Made by a program: the position numbers and the translations under genes
Shown here: positions 8,797 to 58,293 of the stretch, piece after piece
How the letters are laid out: every line of letters begins with the position of its first letter
Numbering within the stretch: the first letter of the stretch is position 1
The notes under the pieces: model-generated
The model's input: only the letters and a program-made list of their open reading frames with translations
Database searches by the model: none
Told to the model about the DNA's origin: nothing
Sequence record: KX397373.1
DNA: 64,000 nucleotides
Direction: 5' to 3' (one strand)

Positions 8797-8801
8797 AAGA
8801 G

Positions 8802-8837
8802 ACCCTACTCCTTCGGGAGTAGGGTAGTTCTTTTTTT
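8802..8837. terminator. Bidirectional terminator between convergent genes
   Basis: ACCCTACTCC-TTCG-GGAGTAGGGT with an A-rich run before and a T run after. Confidence 0.8.
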
Positions 8838-13331: not shown

Positions 13332-13353
13332 TCAGTAGTCGAACGTTAGGATT

Positions 13354-13391
13354 AGCTTACTCCCTTCGGGGAGTAAGCTTTTTCTTTTTTT
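13354..13391 (+). terminator. Intrinsic terminator after the capsid gene
   Basis: AGCTTACTCCC-TTCG-GGGAGTAAGCT followed by a long T tract. Confidence 0.9.
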
Positions 13392-19247: not shown

Positions 19248-19295
19248 AAAAAGAATACCTACTCCCGAAGGAGTAGGTAGCCTTTATTTTTTTTT
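19244..19295. terminator. Bidirectional terminator (UUCG loop on the minus strand, after the portal gene)
   Basis: A tract + ACCTACTCC-CGAA-GGAGTAGGT + T tract between convergent genes. Confidence 0.85.
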
Positions 19296-48496: not shown

Positions 48497-48509
48497 GCAG
48501 TGTGTGTCG

Positions 48510-48544
48510 CCCTACTCCTCACGGAGTAGGGTTCTTCTTTTTTT
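48510..48544 (+). terminator. Intrinsic terminator
   Basis: CCCTACTCC-TCAC-GGAGTAGGG followed by a T tract. Confidence 0.8.
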
Positions 48545-53153: not shown

Positions 53154-54066
53154 GCCTAAGAAACGTAAGAACGGTGCGGTGATTCTGTCACCACGCATCT
53201 GTGTGGCGGTGGGTAAGAAACTGATTGTACAGGACGGGAAATGGGTCAGCGAAGGGTTCAGTAAATACGCTTCACTGTCCATGTGTGCAGACATGTTAAA
53301 GATGCATGGGAAAGCAGGTCGTAATCGTCGGGCACAGATGCCAAAGGTTATCCGTACTGTTGCAGGCTGGTACATGCGCTACATGAAGAAGAACTTCCCA
53401 CAAGCAGCCACAACGTTTGAAGAAGGGACTTTTGTTCGCACAGAACCCACCGCAATCGGTGGTGAACTCCCGATGCGTACTGGCACCGCGTTGCAGCCTA
53501 GACTGTATGCTTCGCTGACTAACCGCCCGGAGTCAAAACCAACCCCACCGGAAATTGAACGTATCCTTCGTTCTAAACGCCACGCAGTTAAGAGCGCACC
53601 AAATGAGAACGGTGTCCGTCTGGAAACCGTCTTCACGCATTACGAAGAAGGTGGTTACGGTGTGTTCAGTCGTTGGGTCGATGACCAGGGTCGTCCAACC
53701 AACAGCAAAGGTGTACTGTTGAACCTGCCGGAAATCAAAGGCGTGAAACTTAAGAGTAGTGGGAACATCGAAGGTATTCCTGCGAAGCTTATCAGCACGC
53801 TGGACGATGAAACGATGGCTGATATCGTTAAGAAGTTCGGCACTGTGCAGGAACAGGCTTTGCTGGATTCCCTCAATCCGGAAACTGCATCCGAATATAC
53901 ACCTGAGAAAGCGCAGGATGTGTTAGCGATTATTGTGAAACGGTTTGTGGAAAAAGAGTTGAAGGTAACGCTGCCCCACAGCAAGGTTGACGTGAAGTTC
54001 CGTAGCCCCACTATGGAAGACATTGATAATCTGCGTGATGCCTTACAGGAACGTGATGGGAAATAA
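53146..54066 (+). CDS. Hypothetical protein starting MLKPKKRK
   Basis: 306 aa, GAGG RBS. Confidence 0.8.
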   Translation: MLKPKKRKNGAVILSPRICVAVGKKLIVQDGKWVSEGFSKYASLSMCADMLKMHGKAGRNRRAQMPKVIRTVAGWYMRYMKKNFPQAATTFEEGTFVRTEPTAIGGELPMRTGTALQPRLYASLTNRPESKPTPPEIERILRSKRHAVKSAPNENGVRLETVFTHYEEGGYGVFSRWVDDQGRPTNSKGVLLNLPEIKGVKLKSSGNIEGIPAKLISTLDDETMADIVKKFGTVQEQALLDSLNPETASEYTPEKAQDVLAIIVKRFVEKELKVTLPHSKVDVKFRSPTMEDIDNLRDALQERDGK

Positions 54067-54074
54067 ATAAGTGG

Positions 54075-54110
54075 TACCCTACTCCTCCGGGAGTAGGGTA
54101 TTTCTTTTTT
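54075..54110 (+). terminator. Intrinsic terminator
   Basis: TACCCTACTCC-TCCG-GGAGTAGGGTA followed by a T tract. Confidence 0.85.
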
Positions 54111-54138
54111 TGTCTCAGCATTGATTAAAAATAATTTC

Positions 54139-54158
54139 AGATATATATTACTTAGGTG
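54139..54158 (+). promoter_or_regulatory. Putative early promoter with leader hairpin and TCGACCATT box
   Basis: AGATATATATTACTTAGGTG, a GAGAG/CTCTT hairpin, and TCGACCATT at 54184. Confidence 0.8.
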
Positions 54159-54213
54159 AGAGTTAATACAAATCTCTTACTAATCGACCATTTAACCTAA
54201 AGGAATTTGAATC

Positions 54214-54570
54214 ATGACTATCGTAACTACTGGTGTTCTGAATGCGCGTCTGGCAGAAACTGTTGCAGTGATTAAAGAAACTGATGCGCTTTACAATGAC
54301 CACCGTGACGGTGAGAAATACCTGAGCTATGCCGACATTAAATACTTCGGCGTAGCTTACCATCCGGAGTTCGGTCTGTGCTTAGTCGCGGCCCATTCTC
54401 CTGTACAGTCGCTGAACCGCATCACGGTTCGCGATGGCAAAGCTTACATCACCACTTGGGATGTAGGCGGTACCCTGCGTGCTGATTGGCACAAGGACGA
54501 CATGGAAGCAGCACTGAACGCGCTCATGTCAGCGAAGTACAGCAACCTGGTTGCAATCTTCAAAGCGTAA
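54214..54570 (+). CDS. Hypothetical early protein
   Basis: 118 aa, CCTAAAGGA RBS. Confidence 0.8.
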   Translation: MTIVTTGVLNARLAETVAVIKETDALYNDHRDGEKYLSYADIKYFGVAYHPEFGLCLVAAHSPVQSLNRITVRDGKAYITTWDVGGTLRADWHKDDMEAALNALMSAKYSNLVAIFKA

Positions 54571-54580
54571 GACAACCTTT

Positions 54581-54633
54581 GGCCACCACCCGGTGGCCTT
54601 TCTAATTCGACTATTACCATTAGGAGCATTACC
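54581..54633 (+). repeat. Intergenic hairpin + TCGACYATT + RBS unit, copy 2
   Basis: GGCCACCACCCGGTGGCCTTTCTAATTCGACTATTACCATTAGGAGCATTA; near-identical to 5789-5842. Confidence 0.85.
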
Positions 54634-55062
54634 ATGTTTACACTGAACTCTGAATTACGTGACTTCGTTCGCAACAACCCTAACGTTGCCTCTCTCGTTA
54701 TCGTCATCGCCGTTAATGGGCAGGACCCGAACGAATACGCTATTGAACAATACGAAGCGTTGCTCAAAGAAGCAAAACGTGCAGCGCTGTATGCACCACT
54801 GCCGAAGCGCGAACATTTCCCAGAAGGCGAACTGGGTGATACTATCTATCACGATATTCGTGCGCAATACTTCGTCAACCAACGCGTGTTCGATATTGAA
54901 CAAGCACCACTCGAAGGCCGTACCTTCGGTGACATGATTCGTAACTGGCGCGAAGAACTGATGAAAGATAACACTATCGCTGAACTCAGCAAATCTTTCA
55001 GCCAGACTTCACTGGACTTCGAGCAGCGTAACATCGCACTCGCTACCCATCGCGTTATCTAA
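54634..55062 (+). CDS. Hypothetical early protein
   Basis: 142 aa, AGGAG RBS. Confidence 0.8.
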   Translation: MFTLNSELRDFVRNNPNVASLVIVIAVNGQDPNEYAIEQYEALLKEAKRAALYAPLPKREHFPEGELGDTIYHDIRAQYFVNQRVFDIEQAPLEGRTFGDMIRNWREELMKDNTIAELSKSFSQTSLDFEQRNIALATHRVI

Positions 55063-55136
55063 GTAACACTCGGGAGAGCCTAGGCTCTCCCTTCTCTTAT
55101 ACTCATCTCAAATCTAAGACAAAAAGGAAATTCACC

Positions 55137-55370
55137 ATGCGCAACTTATTCACTGCTACTACTACTTCTGTAATCGCTACCGCTTCTGCTGGCAGCAAAA
55201 CTACTTCTCGCAAACCTGACCTGCTGGACGTCCTGCTGAAACTGTCTCACACCGAGCGTGAAGCAGTGATGAAAGAACTGAAAGAAGGCAACAAGATGGT
55301 AGACAAATTAGATGTGGTCTACGGTTCTAAAGACAAGAAAGATTCTGGCGGTCTGCTGTTCATGGCCTAA
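55137..55370 (+). CDS. Hypothetical small early protein
   Basis: 77 aa; AAGGA RBS; preceded by hairpin GGGAGAGCC-TA-GGCTCTCCC. Confidence 0.75.
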   Translation: MRNLFTATTTSVIATASAGSKTTSRKPDLLDVLLKLSHTEREAVMKELKEGNKMVDKLDVVYGSKDKKDSGGLLFMA

Positions 55371-55376
55371 GGCTAA

Positions 55377-55467
55377 CGCGATGCGAAACTATTACTTGCG
55401 ATGTTGATGTCCTGGGGAAACCTGGGGCATCACATCGTGACGTAATCATCGCGCTTTCTTTTTTTTT
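55377..55467 (+). other. Long four-segment RNA hairpin with GAAA loop followed by a U tract
   Basis: 30 potential base pairs in 4 nested stems at 55377-55453; T tract at 55455-55467. Confidence 0.7.
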
Positions 55468-55566
55468 CGCCAGCCCCCAGTTCACGATACCCTCGCGTTT
55501 TGAATCTGTTCCCCTAGCGGAAATTGCTATGCAACACCCGACCCTTCACTCGACAGGAGAGCAGTA

Positions 55567-57384
55567 ATGACCACCCAAGCGATGGCCGTCATCTCATTTG
55601 ATCGTTGTGCTTCAATTGGCGCACTGCGCGCTACTGAACCTGCTCAGCCAGGTCAACGTATTGATTTGAAAGAATATAGTCAGGGCACTGGCTACGGCGG
55701 AGGTTACTTCATTCACCAAGAGAATGATACGACTTCACCGGATGATGGGGGTTATTGCATCGTGACGCCGAAAGGTGCACGCTGGAAACGTGCGTTAAAC
55801 TCTTTACATGAACTCAACGTCTGTCACTTCGGTGCAGTCGGGGGTGGTAAAGTAGATACCGCTGACGCGTTCGCGAAAATGATGGCTTGGTCTCAGGCGA
55901 ACATCCCTGCTATCGGCGTGCAATATCCCGCCGGTATGTTCAAGCTTTCCAAGTTTACCAACACCAAAGAGATTGCGCGTTTCCGTGTAGCGGGTGCGCC
56001 AGTCAACAGTGACTTCGGCTATTTCAATACCACAACCCTTATCGGTGACAATACCGAAGAGGGTTTTATCCTGGATATCGTGGCGCGCCGTACGTCTATC
56101 GCTCACATCAACTTCGAAGGTGCTGCTGATCCGTTCGCGGCTAATGACAAGAAAGTCGCGGGGCTGAAAGGTTTCCTGCGTAACACTTGTCCGGGCGGTC
56201 AATACGTTCGTGTGAGCAACTGGGCAAGTTCGTTCGTTGGGGGTGTGACCTTCAGTATCCTTGATGCGCTGGACACCAAGTTCGACCAGTTCTACGTTTC
56301 TAAACACACCAACAGCTTCATCTATGGTCGTTGGTCTGGTCAGACGTGGGGTGTGTGGGATCACGAAACTGCTATCGAGCTGTCGAACTTCAACGTGCAG
56401 AACTGTACTGGCCCGCACGTCTTTGACCTGCCGCGTGCGACGCAGTCTGAAATCAATAACGGTTGGATTGAACACACAACTAACCCTGGTAACTTGTCTG
56501 ATGGCCATTGGCTTATCAGCAACTTCTCCATGGAAGGCTGTGGGCCGATGCTGATTGAGAATGCGCGTTTAACACGCCATCACATCAATCTGCAAGCGGG
56601 GTCGAGCTGGGACAAGTCCACGGGTAACTCTAACTGGACAGGTCTGTCAGGCTACGAGAAAGGTGACCTGCAACTGGAGTGGCACGGCATTGATGTTGCC
56701 GGTTCCATGACAGCAAGCTACTACTCGCCAGAGTTCCGTCTCGACAACAACAAAGGGTCGTCACAGTGGTTCTATCTCGGGAACATCCGCACCACCGGTG
56801 TGGGTGAGAACGTGAAGATTACCCTGCAAGGTACCCGTGGTTATAACTCGGTTAAAGGCGATGCTACGCAACACGGTGGGGCTGCACAGGCTCACGGTGC
56901 CGCAGTTATCAGCATCAAAACCGTGTCATCTAACTACGTTGACCTGGAGTGGGATGGCGAGGGTGCCTGTCCGGTGAAGAACGTCAAGTTCACGAAACCG
57001 TTCAAGAACTCCTGCCATGTCTTCGTGGAGCTGTTCGACTGGACGCGTTACGTCTCACCGTTCGTACAAGTCACCTCGAAGTCTCGCTTTGAAGCAGGGA
57101 TTCCGTTTGATGTCGTCTATGACGGCCGGGCATTAACACTGGCTGAAATCCAGGCCATTGTCGATACCCAGTCAGCTGCGGCGGGTTCAACGATTGAACT
57201 GCTGGATGGCGTAACCGGGATGTGCTTCGGTGCCAAGAACGGTATCGGTTGGAACGGGCAAGGCGACCTTCTGCTGCGCTTTGCGCTGAAAGACGGCTAC
57301 CTGCCAGTGAAGATTACCGACCCGGTAACTGAGCGCGTGACGCAAGGCTACATCAAGGTCGAAACATCTATTCCGGCGAAGTAA
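55567..57384 (+). CDS. Tailspike-fold (beta-helix) protein, AmsF/WceF-like EPS-modifying enzyme or depolymerase
   Basis: N-terminal tailspike-type domain (LRATEP...GYGGGYF...DDGG..V...G.RWKR), then NVCHFGAVGGGKVDTADAF...YPAG.F (pectin-lyase-like start) and Gly/Asn/Ser-rich beta-helix-like repeats. Family named from recollection of amsF homologs in Erwinia jumbo phages. Confidence 0.6.
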   Translation: MTTQAMAVISFDRCASIGALRATEPAQPGQRIDLKEYSQGTGYGGGYFIHQENDTTSPDDGGYCIVTPKGARWKRALNSLHELNVCHFGAVGGGKVDTADAFAKMMAWSQANIPAIGVQYPAGMFKLSKFTNTKEIARFRVAGAPVNSDFGYFNTTTLIGDNTEEGFILDIVARRTSIAHINFEGAADPFAANDKKVAGLKGFLRNTCPGGQYVRVSNWASSFVGGVTFSILDALDTKFDQFYVSKHTNSFIYGRWSGQTWGVWDHETAIELSNFNVQNCTGPHVFDLPRATQSEINNGWIEHTTNPGNLSDGHWLISNFSMEGCGPMLIENARLTRHHINLQAGSSWDKSTGNSNWTGLSGYEKGDLQLEWHGIDVAGSMTASYYSPEFRLDNNKGSSQWFYLGNIRTTGVGENVKITLQGTRGYNSVKGDATQHGGAAQAHGAAVISIKTVSSNYVDLEWDGEGACPVKNVKFTKPFKNSCHVFVELFDWTRYVSPFVQVTSKSRFEAGIPFDVVYDGRALTLAEIQAIVDTQSAAAGSTIELLDGVTGMCFGAKNGIGWNGQGDLLLRFALKDGYLPVKITDPVTERVTQGYIKVETSIPAK

Positions 57385-57426: not shown

Positions 57427-57495
57427 GCCCCTTTTAATATGCTGGCAGGGGGTCATAGACGTGACCTCAACAATCCCTTTAAACGAGTTAACGCG

Positions 57496-58293
57496 ATGTC
57501 TCTTACTTCTAAACAGAATCTGCTAAAACTCATCAACGAAGAAAACAAAATCAGCCCTCCGCTGAGTTTGGATGACGTTGATATCGGACTGCCGGAGGTG
57601 GTGTCAGTAGATGGGCGTGATTCGCAGGTAGTATTGACTTCCAAAATGCGCGGGGATGAAGGTTCCCAGGTGACCGTGGATTACCACCGTCGCCCATTAG
57701 AAGATTACCTGAAAGACGACAATGTCTTTGGTGACGAGGATGTGCACACCACGCACGACCTTATCACGGCGATTAACGAACGGTTCGGGTTGAAGTTAGT
57801 GGCTGAGGATATCGAAGATAATCCGGTTGCTGGCATCTCCCACGATGTCGTGGCGGTAACGGATTCCCATGAGTGGCGAAGCGTTGCAACCATCGAAATC
57901 AAACCTGCCACACCCCTGGCGGATGTGATTCCAAACACGGAGCTGGACGGTCTTCTGTATCCCGATCATCAAGACACGCAATTCGGTCAAGCGTATATCT
58001 ATTCGCGTGATGTCGACTGTAGCCACATCTCACCGTTCCTGAGCAAGTTAGCAGTAGGTATCGATGTAGATGACACAGCGTTAGCAGTTGAATTAAACAA
58101 ATGTGTGCCTGAACTTTGGGTTGCTCAAGATACAGCCGCCCCGTATAACCTCCGTAATGCGAAGGTCATCTTCGATGGCATTCCTGCGGACTTACCGGGT
58201 GCTAACACGAAATACGCGTACGTGGTCTCAGTGGAACTCACTGACCTGTGCTCGAACTTCCGTGGTGCGCTGAACTTACACTTTAACAACTAA
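57496..58293 (+). CDS. Virion paralog-family protein 1 (phiKZ gp131-135/SPN3US family-B type)
   Basis: Start at MSLTSKQNLL; family motifs LL..IN..N, Y.R, IN..FGL.L..DI, LDGL.YP, NF.G.L.L.FN. Confidence 0.7.
   Translation: MSLTSKQNLLKLINEENKISPPLSLDDVDIGLPEVVSVDGRDSQVVLTSKMRGDEGSQVTVDYHRRPLEDYLKDDNVFGDEDVHTTHDLITAINERFGLKLVAEDIEDNPVAGISHDVVAVTDSHEWRSVATIEIKPATPLADVIPNTELDGLLYPDHQDTQFGQAYIYSRDVDCSHISPFLSKLAVGIDVDDTALAVELNKCVPELWVAQDTAAPYNLRNAKVIFDGIPADLPGANTKYAYVVSVELTDLCSNFRGALNLHFNN

What the first reader, a model, noticed from the sequence alone, without database searches (positions are those of the whole stretch)
55377..55467. 30-bp, four-segment RNA hairpin closing an early operon
Seen: nested stems CGCGATG/CATCGCG (55377-83/55447-53), ATTAC/GTAAT (55391-95/55442-46), GCGATGT/ACATCGT (55398-404/55432-38) and GATGTCCTGGG/CCTGGGGCATC (55406-16/55421-31, three G-U pairs), a GAAA tetraloop, then a ~13-nt T tract. 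It is roughly three times longer than the other terminators here, with G-U pairs and bulges typical of RNA-level selection. Established: T7 early mRNA uses long bulged hairpins as RNase III sites. Inference: a processing site, a 3'-UTR-derived sRNA, or a dsRNA decoy/ligand for host RNA-sensing defences.
Basis: partly seen in the sequence, partly recalled or inferred. Interest (0 to 1): 0.66.

Follow-up and report, generated by a model that had tools for sequence, protein, structure and literature searches.

The report
Giant terminator hairpin in jumbo phage
A real, unusually long (30-33 bp) RNA hairpin followed by a U-run ends a small three-gene unit of the Erwinia jumbo phage Stratton; it is most likely an oversized transcription terminator and mRNA 3'-end protector, not a new kind of RNA element, but why this one locus carries the genome's strongest hairpin is unexplained.

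Summary
Window 55377-55453 folds into a four-segment hairpin with a GAAA loop (30 bp as described, 33 by RNAfold; -42.6 kcal/mol, z -7.5). A 13-nt tract with 12 T follows directly.

The window is Erwinia jumbo phage vB_EamM_Stratton (SPN3US/phiKZ-like). The hairpin lies 7 nt after the stop of gp154 and 100 nt before the EPS-depolymerase gene.
- It is the strongest T-tract-abutting intergenic hairpin in the 244-kb genome (-42.0; next -29.9; median -18).
- It closes a 1.2-kb unit (gp152-154) that starts at a near-perfect copy of an AT-rich promoter-like motif. By analogy with phiKZ-type virion-RNAP promoters this is probably early.
- G-U pairs make it strand-specific (+ -42.6, - -29.0), so it acts as RNA.

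Only the apical 10-13 bp stem is conserved across lineages (compensatory changes at 6 of 10 positions). The outer segments are lineage-specific: a rod in Stratton/phiEaH2, branched in Asesino, 15 bp in ChrisDB and Caitlin, and an independently built ~29-bp rod in Machina-type phages.

Best reading: an extreme long-stem intrinsic terminator and 3' stabiliser. RNase III processing, an sRNA or a decoy are untested, because no RNA data exist. Interest is modest.

The parts
54138..54154 (+). AT-rich promoter-like motif (class CAGATATATATTACYTA), the putative start of the gp152-154 unit
   Evidence: Six hits in the window against 0.08 expected. Eleven in the Stratton genome, and 9-11 in Huxley, Asesino and ChrisDB, all on the forward strand with 0 in the reversed-pattern control. 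A perfect copy lies upstream of the homologous unit in each of those genomes. The link to vRNAP promoters is by analogy (PMC5312081).
54214..54570 (+). gp152, 118 aa, unknown function (phrog_33210)
54581..54598 (+). Short 7-bp hairpin with a weak T run after gp152 (weak internal terminator or stabiliser)
54634..55062 (+). gp153, 142 aa, unknown function (phrog_8484)
55072..55091 (+). Short 8-bp hairpin with a weak T run after gp153
55137..55370 (+). gp154, 77 aa, unknown function (phrog_10202). Conserved in 47 SPN3US-like phage records.
   Evidence: The AlphaFold model is low-confidence (pLDDT 53).
55377..55453 (+). The long four-segment hairpin (30-33 bp), acting as RNA on the + strand
   Evidence: Ranked first in the window and in the genome.
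55384..55390 (+). 7-nt one-sided bulge between the outer stem and the rest of the rod
   Evidence: Dot-bracket structures
55399..55405 (+). CGATGTT block, invariant in six lineages although its pairing partner changes
   Evidence: Alignment A2. It is not a recurrent genomic motif.
55406..55431 (+). Apical 11-bp stem with GAAA loop, the conserved core terminator stem
   Evidence: Compensatory double changes at 6 of 10 positions across six lineages
55455..55467 (+). U/T tract (12 of 13 T) that starts 1 nt after the stem. It is also the exact point where Stratton and phiEaH2 begin to diverge.
55517..55531 (+). Conserved block ending in TGCTATG, about 40 nt upstream of the gp155 start. Candidate late (TATG-type) promoter.
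   Evidence: Conserved in Stratton, phiEaH2, Asesino and Machina-type phages. It is not a repeated word in the window. TATG as the phiKZ late-promoter core is from PMC5312081.
55567..57384 (+). gp155, EPS depolymerase (tail enzyme), the gene insulated by the hairpin
   Evidence: phrog_4250, E 1e-257; annotation

Best explanation
The element is an exceptionally long-stem intrinsic (hairpin plus U-tract) terminator in the 3' UTR of gp154.

Proposed mechanism:
1. The phage RNA polymerase transcribes the short gp152-gp153-gp154 unit from an AT-rich, probably early, promoter.
2. It passes two weak 7-8 bp hairpins between the genes.
3. The conserved GC-rich apical stem nucleates first and the helix zips down through three further segments. 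Its base closes 1 nt before a 13-nt U-run, and the transcript is released there.
4. The released mRNA keeps a roughly -42 kcal/mol 3' hairpin, which should block 3'-to-5' exonucleases.
5. The terminator also insulates the downstream depolymerase and virion genes, which have their own promoter-like elements.

Shown here: the structure, its position, its strand specificity, covariation of the apical stem, and its outlier status.
Inferred: actual termination, mRNA stabilisation and the timing of the unit.
For: - Canonical terminator geometry. The stem base lies 1 nt from a tract with 12 of 13 U, 7 nt after a stop codon, on the strand of the flanking genes.
- phiKZ-family polymerases do stop at hairpin plus U/T-rich sites. 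ONT-cappable-seq of phiKZ and 201phi2-1 shows this, and in 201phi2-1 elongated stems gave stronger termination (PMC10914365; PMC11512511).
- Long stems (14-15 bp or more) are an established way to make terminators resist antitermination (PMC10325885).
- The + strand folds 13.6 kcal/mol better than the - strand in Stratton, and 18.6 better in SNUABM10, because of G-U pairs.
- The apical stem has compensatory changes at 6 of 10 positions.
- In Machina-type phages all 29 pairs are kept in 6 distinct sequences. Variable columns are enriched in unpaired positions (6 of 19 against 4 of 58; p = 0.012).
- A terminator follows the gp154 homologue in every lineage that has an intergenic gap there.
- The unit is bracketed by a conserved promoter-like motif.
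- The element is first of 76 intergenic T-tract hairpins in Stratton, and the top compact one of 99 in Huxley.
Against: - No transcript 3' end has been measured. No RNA run holds the phage.
- A 10-15 bp stem suffices at the same position in ChrisDB, Caitlin, SNUABM29 and Proteus phage 7.
- Ten other units with the same promoter class end in ordinary terminators. Termination alone therefore does not explain the extra 20 bp.
- In Asesino the structure is branched, and only a 4-bp helix abuts the U-run, which is poor terminator geometry.
- The 5' half is more conserved in sequence than a plain stem requires, including an invariant 7-nt block.
- In Huxley the homologous hairpin is not in the top six by the looser 90-nt MFE measure.
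Confidence: 0.6

Rival explanations
1. RNase III processing or retroregulation site. The 25-26 bp quasi-continuous helix between the loop and the 7-nt bulge would be cut by host RNase III once the mRNA is in the cytoplasm. That would either trim the 3' end to a stable stub, as in T7 early mRNAs, or remove the protective hairpin and trigger decay of the gp152-154 mRNA as a timed shut-off. This could coexist with termination.
For: - The helix is longer than two turns and is interrupted by bulges, like known phage RNase III sites (structure; the T7 comparison is textbook knowledge, not tested here).
- The extra length beyond what termination needs is otherwise unexplained.
- A long rod recurs independently in Machina-type phages.
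Against: - There are no cleavage data.
- The rod is not conserved in Asesino, ChrisDB or Caitlin, where the quasi-continuous helix is only 13-15 bp.
- It lies at a 3' end, not between cistrons.
- The whole hairpin is upstream of the U-run, unlike lambda sib.
- Rfam gives no match.
Confidence: 0.2
2. A functional stable RNA. After 5' decay of the mRNA, the roughly 85-95 nt hairpin would persist as a 3'-UTR-derived small RNA, a protein-binding module, or a dsRNA decoy for host defences.
For: - The 5' half is conserved in sequence across lineages, with an invariant CGATGTT block whose partner changes.
- The element is extremely stable.
- It is the outlier at this one locus in Stratton and, by the compact-hairpin measure, in Huxley. 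By the looser 90-nt measure it is also first in Asesino but not in Huxley's top six.
- Small RNAs (5'-UTR-derived and intergenic) are reported in related giant phages (PMC11512511).
Against: - The conserved block is base-paired in Stratton, not exposed like a seed.
- The block does not recur elsewhere in the genome.
- The overall architecture differs between lineages.
- There is no Rfam match and no expression data.
- The decoy idea has no evidence of any kind.
Confidence: 0.1
3. A DNA-level element. The inverted repeat would mark or promote recombination at the left edge of a swappable tail-enzyme cassette, and any effect on RNA would be incidental.
For: - Stratton and phiEaH2 are about 99% identical through the unit and the hairpin, then diverge abruptly from the T tract onward: 31 differences in 110 nt.
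- The slot downstream holds different genes in different phages.
Against: - G-U pairs make the fold much better on the + strand as RNA.
- As DNA the hairpin is only -21 kcal/mol on + and -17 on -.
- The stem substitutions seen are those that RNA pairing tolerates: U-A to U-G.
- The position between a stop codon and a U-run is that of a terminator.
Confidence: 0.05

Closest known systems
Rho-independent (intrinsic) terminators of phiKZ-family jumbo phages (phiKZ, 201phi2-1)
   Same: A GC-rich stem-loop directly followed by a U/T-rich run, at the end of a transcription unit. It is read by phage multisubunit RNA polymerases. In 201phi2-1 elongated stems gave stronger termination (PMC10914365; PMC11512511).
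   Different: Those terminators are short and stereotyped: about 7-8 bp in phiKZ, and -6.9 to -19.3 kcal/mol in 201phi2-1. Stratton has its own stereotyped family of 9-12 bp hairpins. This element has 30-33 bp in four segments, about -42 kcal/mol, and is unique in the genome.
Extraordinarily long-stem, antitermination-resistant terminators (TerR of plasmid pLS20; PMC10325885)
   Same: The stem is far longer than average, the U-tract is long, and the element sits at the true end of an operon. In that study length, not sequence, was the functional determinant, and imperfect stems were tolerated.
   Different: TerR has 15 bp, so this element is twice as long. No processive antitermination system is known or was found for these phages. 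The polymerase is also different: host B. subtilis RNAP there, phage RNAP here.
Phage RNase III sites (T7 R1.1-type) and the lambda sib retroregulator
   Same: A long, bulged RNA hairpin at the 3' side of early phage messages. The helix is long enough for RNase III.
   Different: T7 sites lie between cistrons without a U-run. The sib hairpin forms fully only in read-through transcripts that extend past the terminator. Here the whole hairpin precedes the U-run. No cleavage evidence exists.
3' stabiliser hairpins ('positive retroregulators', such as the B. thuringiensis cry terminator; from my own knowledge, not checked here)
   Same: A very stable terminator stem-loop that prolongs the half-life of the upstream mRNA.
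   Different: The function is not measured here. The 5' half is conserved across lineages while the 3' half is variable, which is not a described feature of such elements.

Membership tests
Intrinsic (Rho-independent) terminator | GC-rich stem-loop immediately followed by a U-run | tested here: met
   The stem base at 55453 lies 1 nt from a tract with 12 of 13 T at 55455-55467.
Intrinsic (Rho-independent) terminator | Lies downstream of a stop codon on the strand of the upstream gene, and folds as RNA on that strand | tested here: met
   It lies 7 nt after the gp154 stop. The + strand gives -42.6 and the - strand -29.0 kcal/mol.
Intrinsic (Rho-independent) terminator | Stem of the usual length (about 5-14 bp) | tested here: not met
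   The stem has 30-33 bp. The genome's median is 14 bp, including A/U extensions.
Intrinsic (Rho-independent) terminator | Transcripts actually end in the U-run | not testable with these tools
   No RNA run holds the phage, and the contigs laid did not cover the site.
Long-stem antitermination-resistant terminator (TerR type) | Stem of 14-15 bp or more, with a U-tract of at least 7 | tested here: met
   30-33 bp and a U-run with 12 of 13 U. The criteria come from PMC10325885.
Long-stem antitermination-resistant terminator (TerR type) | Sits at the end of an operon that is subject to processive antitermination, and resists it | not testable with these tools
   No antitermination system is known for these phages. 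Two weak internal hairpins (54581 and 55072) would fit such a scheme, but that is only suggestive.
RNase III processing site (T7 R1.1 type) | About 20 bp or more of double-stranded RNA with an internal loop or bulge | tested here: met
   There is a 25-26 bp quasi-continuous helix from the loop down to the 7-nt bulge.
RNase III processing site (T7 R1.1 type) | rnc-dependent cleavage, and a position between cistrons of one transcript | tested here: inconclusive
   The position is a 3' end before a U-run, not inter-cistronic. Cleavage is not testable here.
Lambda sib-type retroregulator | The RNase III hairpin forms fully only in read-through transcripts, so it spans the terminator's U-run | tested here: not met
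   Both arms lie upstream of the U-run.
3'-UTR-derived small RNA | Terminator hairpin plus a conserved single-stranded seed, and accumulation as a discrete RNA | tested here: inconclusive
   A conserved 7-nt block exists, but it is base-paired in Stratton. Accumulation is not testable. There is no Rfam match.

The most novel reading that the evidence does not exclude
The gp154 3' UTR is a dedicated regulatory RNA module of Erwinia-infecting SPN3US-like jumbo phages, not just a stop signal. Its features would be a sequence-conserved 5' half with an invariant CGAUGUU block, and a selected, very stable long or branched fold. It would be cut by RNase III or bound by a phage or host factor, either to time the decay or stabilisation of this early message or to leave a persistent RNA of about 90 nt.
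Probability: 0.2. Interest if true: 0.6.

Novelty: new member of a known kind. Interest (0 to 1): 0.3.

Why it matters
If the reading is right, this is the most extreme natural long-stem terminator seen in a phiKZ-like phage. It would be a useful very strong insulator part.

It also gives a clean test case for a specific question: do the phage's own multisubunit RNA polymerases obey the same hairpin-length rules as bacterial RNAP? These polymerases probably work inside a phage nucleus without coupled translation. That last point is assumed from the phage's relatives and was not checked here.

The work also defines an operon map for this poorly annotated phage group: a promoter class, a terminator family, and a cassette slot for the depolymerase.

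If the extra length serves RNase III or a binding factor instead, it would be a first example of 3'-UTR-based post-transcriptional timing in this phage family.

Tried and rejected
- Raw sliding-window MFE (110-nt spans, both strands) did not single out the element, because branched folds in coding sequence reach -43 to -49 kcal/mol. I replaced it with T-tract-anchored single-hairpin scans.
- The Rfam E-value scan of 54000-57000 found nothing at the hairpin.
- The sequencing-run search found no RNA holder. Contigs of the two runs laid did not cover 54600-56340, so they gave neither variants nor transcript ends.
- IMG/VR and metagenome searches with gp154 added only one new hairpin variant, L031.
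- TGCTATG and ATATGCTGG as general promoter words are not enriched in the window. Only their cross-phage conservation supports a promoter role.
- GCGATGTT as a recurrent genomic motif: its other copies are in coding sequence, at chance frequency.
- Identity of the hairpin between Stratton and phiEaH2 as evidence of selection was rejected, because the whole upstream unit is about 99% identical.
- Structure prediction of gp154, to look for an RNA-binding fold, gave pLDDT 53 and was unusable, so no fold search was run. The protein atlas gave no hit and Pfam nothing.
- Literature searches for SPN3US gp135/gp136 timing, and for transcriptomics of these Erwinia phages, found nothing usable.
- A small ORF inside the hairpin, or read-through of the gp154 stop, was considered and dropped. 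A second in-frame stop follows after one codon, and the putative peptide is not conserved in Asesino or ChrisDB (my reading).

Full report
IDENTITY AND CONTEXT

The window matches Erwinia phage vB_EamM_Stratton (KX397373; window position = record position minus 62000) at 100%. Stratton is a 244-kb SPN3US/phiKZ-like jumbo phage of the genus Erskinevirus that encodes split multisubunit RNA polymerases.

The finding lies in the 196-nt gap between gp154 and gp155. gp154 is a 77-aa protein of unknown function (55137-55370, phrog_10202). gp155 is an EPS depolymerase (55567-57384, phrog_4250, E 1e-257).

RNAfold gives the same hairpin with 33 pairs:
- -42.6 kcal/mol for 79 nt, z -7.5, with no shuffle as good;
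- -45.8 kcal/mol, z -6.0, with flanks.

Raw windowed MFE does not discriminate, because coding sequence reaches similar energies through branched folds. I therefore scored, for every T tract, the best single hairpin whose base abuts the tract.
- In the window the element is first: -42.5 kcal/mol and 33 bp, against 9-17 bp and -14 to -26 kcal/mol for recognisable terminators.
- In the whole genome (386 T tracts on both strands), after removing hits that lie in ORFs of 90 aa or more, it is first of 76: -42.0, next -29.9, median -18.1 kcal/mol and 14 bp.

IT ACTS AS + STRAND RNA

Because of G-U pairs the + strand folds far better than its complement:
- Stratton: -42.6 against -29.0 kcal/mol.
- SNUABM10 homologue: -35.3 against -16.7 kcal/mol.
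- Huxley and SNUABM4 are nearly symmetric.

As DNA the hairpin is weak: -21.4 kcal/mol on + and -17.3 on -. This argues against a cruciform or a bidirectional element.

IT CLOSES A DEFINED TRANSCRIPTION UNIT

A 17-nt AT-rich motif (CAGATATATATTACYTA) occurs 6 times in the window against 0.08 expected by chance.
- It occurs 11 times in the Stratton genome, and 9-11 times in Huxley, Asesino and ChrisDB.
- Every copy is on the forward strand, and the reversed-pattern control finds none.
- Each copy sits 55-80 nt upstream of a gene start and is followed by a conserved 5'-UTR stem and leader.
- A near-perfect copy at 54138-54154 precedes gp152. A perfect copy precedes the homologous unit in the three other genomes.

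[quoted passage not shown] By that analogy gp152-gp153-gp154 is an early unit of 1.2 kb.

gp152 and gp153 are each followed by a 7-8 bp hairpin with a poor T run. The large hairpin with the strong U-run ends the unit.

Downstream, a block ending in TGCTATG is conserved about 40 nt before the depolymerase start in Stratton, phiEaH2, Asesino and the Machina-type phages. A second conserved TATG-containing block precedes the first virion-structural gene in every lineage examined. So the hairpin separates an early-type unit from late-type units. The timing is inferred, not measured.

COMPARATIVE ANATOMY

gp154 homologues exist in 47 phage records. Wherever there is a real intergenic gap after the homologue, a terminator follows, but its size varies:
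- Stratton and phiEaH2: the same 33-bp rod.
- Asesino: the apical 13-bp stem is kept, with a U-A to C-G compensatory change. The 3' outer arm is unrelated, and the 5' arm pairs with upstream sequence. The whole forms a branched structure closed by a 4-bp helix next to the U-run.
- ChrisDB, SNUABM9 and Caitlin: about 15 bp.
- SNUABM4: a branched form with a long outer stem.
- SNUABM29, Proteus phage 7 and SEGD1: plain 8-9 bp terminators.
- SPN3US, EC001 and SPAsTU: no gap. The next gene follows, and a plain terminator comes after it.
- Machina-type phages (Huxley, Machina, Parshik, SNUABM10, SNUABM43, pSal-04 and one metagenomic variant): a rod of about 29 bp, different in sequence, that closes directly on the U-run.

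Two points follow from the alignments.
- Across the Erskinevirus/ChrisDB group the apical stem shows compensatory double changes at 6 of 10 positions.
- Within the Machina type all 29 pairs are intact in 6 distinct sequences. The four changes in paired columns are wobble-to-Watson-Crick on one side. Variable columns are enriched in unpaired positions (6 of 19 against 4 of 58; Fisher p = 0.012).

So the apical stem is an ancient, selected helix. The long extensions are lineage-specific but are maintained where they exist.

REPLICATION OF THE OUTLIER RESULT
- In Huxley the homologous hairpin (-33.8 kcal/mol, 29 bp in 70 nt) is the top compact intergenic hairpin of 99. The one hit above it is a loose 97-nt fold; by its sequence it runs from what looks like the 3' end of a short gene into a simple terminator (not checked against the annotation).
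- With a branching-agnostic measure (MFE of the 90 nt before each intergenic T tract), the element is first in Stratton and first in Asesino, by small margins. It is not in the top six in Huxley.
- Ten other Stratton units driven by the same promoter class end in ordinary terminators of -8 to -30 kcal/mol. The long stem is therefore specific to this locus, not a requirement of the promoter class or the polymerase.

WHAT THE COMPARISONS CANNOT SAY

The identity of the hairpin between Stratton and phiEaH2 is not evidence of selection. The whole upstream unit differs by about 1%. Divergence begins exactly at the T tract, with 31 differences in the 110-nt spacer. This does show that the hairpin belongs to the upstream unit, and that the U-run is a mosaic boundary next to a swappable cassette slot.

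UNEXPLAINED

The 5' half of the element is more conserved in sequence than the 3' half. A 7-nt block, CGATGTT (55399-55405), is invariant in six lineages. Its pairing partner is a downstream arm in Stratton, ChrisDB and Caitlin, and an upstream arm in Asesino and SNUABM4. The block is not a recurrent genomic motif. A plain stem does not need this.

MECHANISM

The best-supported reading is an extreme long-stem intrinsic terminator that also leaves a very stable protective 3' hairpin.
- phiKZ-family polymerases terminate at hairpin plus U/T-rich sites. In 201phi2-1 elongated stems terminated more strongly (PMC10914365; PMC11512511).
- Stems of 14-15 bp or more make terminators resistant to processive antitermination (PMC10325885).

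The extra 20 bp are not explained by termination alone. That leaves room for an RNase III site, a stable RNA, or a bound factor. None of these could be tested: no RNA data exist, there is no Rfam match, and no literature covers these phages.

The lambda sib design is excluded, because both arms precede the U-run. The dsRNA-decoy idea has no support.

VERDICT

This is a real, strand-specific element that stands out in its genome and is partly conserved. It is filed as a new and extreme member of the intrinsic-terminator kind. There is about a 20% chance that it is a dedicated post-transcriptional module.

Noticed in passing
window 5461, 13406, 14349, 37230, 48559, 54138 (all +); 11 sites genome-wide: A promoter-like class, CAGATATATATTACYTA. 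Each copy is followed by a short 5'-UTR stem and a conserved leader ending in AAGGAG. There are 9-11 copies per genome in Stratton, Huxley, Asesino and ChrisDB, all on the forward strand. It is probably the virion-RNAP (early) promoter of this phage group.
   Followed up: partly
window 8801-8826, 13353-13380, 19250-19285, 48509-48532, 54074-54101: A stereotyped terminator family: a 9-12 bp stem of the type CCCTACTCC / GGAGTAGGG, mostly with a UUCG-like loop, then TTCTTTTTTTG. It is analogous to the conserved terminator motif reported for phiKZ.
   Followed up: partly
window 57430-57496, and the equivalent spacer in all relatives (L003, L004, L006, L008-L013, L019-L021): A block (TTTAATATGCTGGCAGGGGG) is conserved across genera. 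It is followed by a 5'-UTR hairpin and GAGTTAACGCGATG in front of the first of the paralogous virion-structural genes. It is a candidate late promoter plus leader.
   Followed up: partly
window 55567-57384, and the slot after gp154 homologues in L003-L014: The slot between gp154 and the structural paralogues is a cassette site. It holds the EPS depolymerase in Erskinevirus and Machina-type phages, unrelated genes of 143-241 aa in SPN3US, SPAsTU and Caitlin, and nothing in ChrisDB, SNUABM4 and SNUABM9. The depolymerase is about 76% identical in DNA between genera whose gp154 proteins are only 42-45% identical, which suggests horizontal exchange.
   Followed up: partly
window 53700-54000 (3' part of gp151): A local divergence hot-spot between Stratton and phiEaH2: 76 differences in 300 nt, inside an otherwise 96-99% identical region.
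   Followed up: no
window 55567-57384 (gp155): The depolymerase matches PHROG 4250 only from profile position 140 onward, so it lacks the N-terminal part of about 140 residues present in other family members.
   Followed up: no
Huxley record KX397368 189718-189791 (+), in locus L048: A 31-bp hairpin of -46.1 kcal/mol abutting a T tract. It lies in a region covered by a long ORF. It is stronger than any terminator in that genome.
   Followed up: no
window 55137-55151 and homologues (alignments A3, A5): The N-terminus of gp154, MRN-F, is invariant across all lineages and is followed by a variable, probably disordered stretch. It could be a targeting tag, like the shared N-termini that another reader noted for gp149-151.
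   Followed up: no
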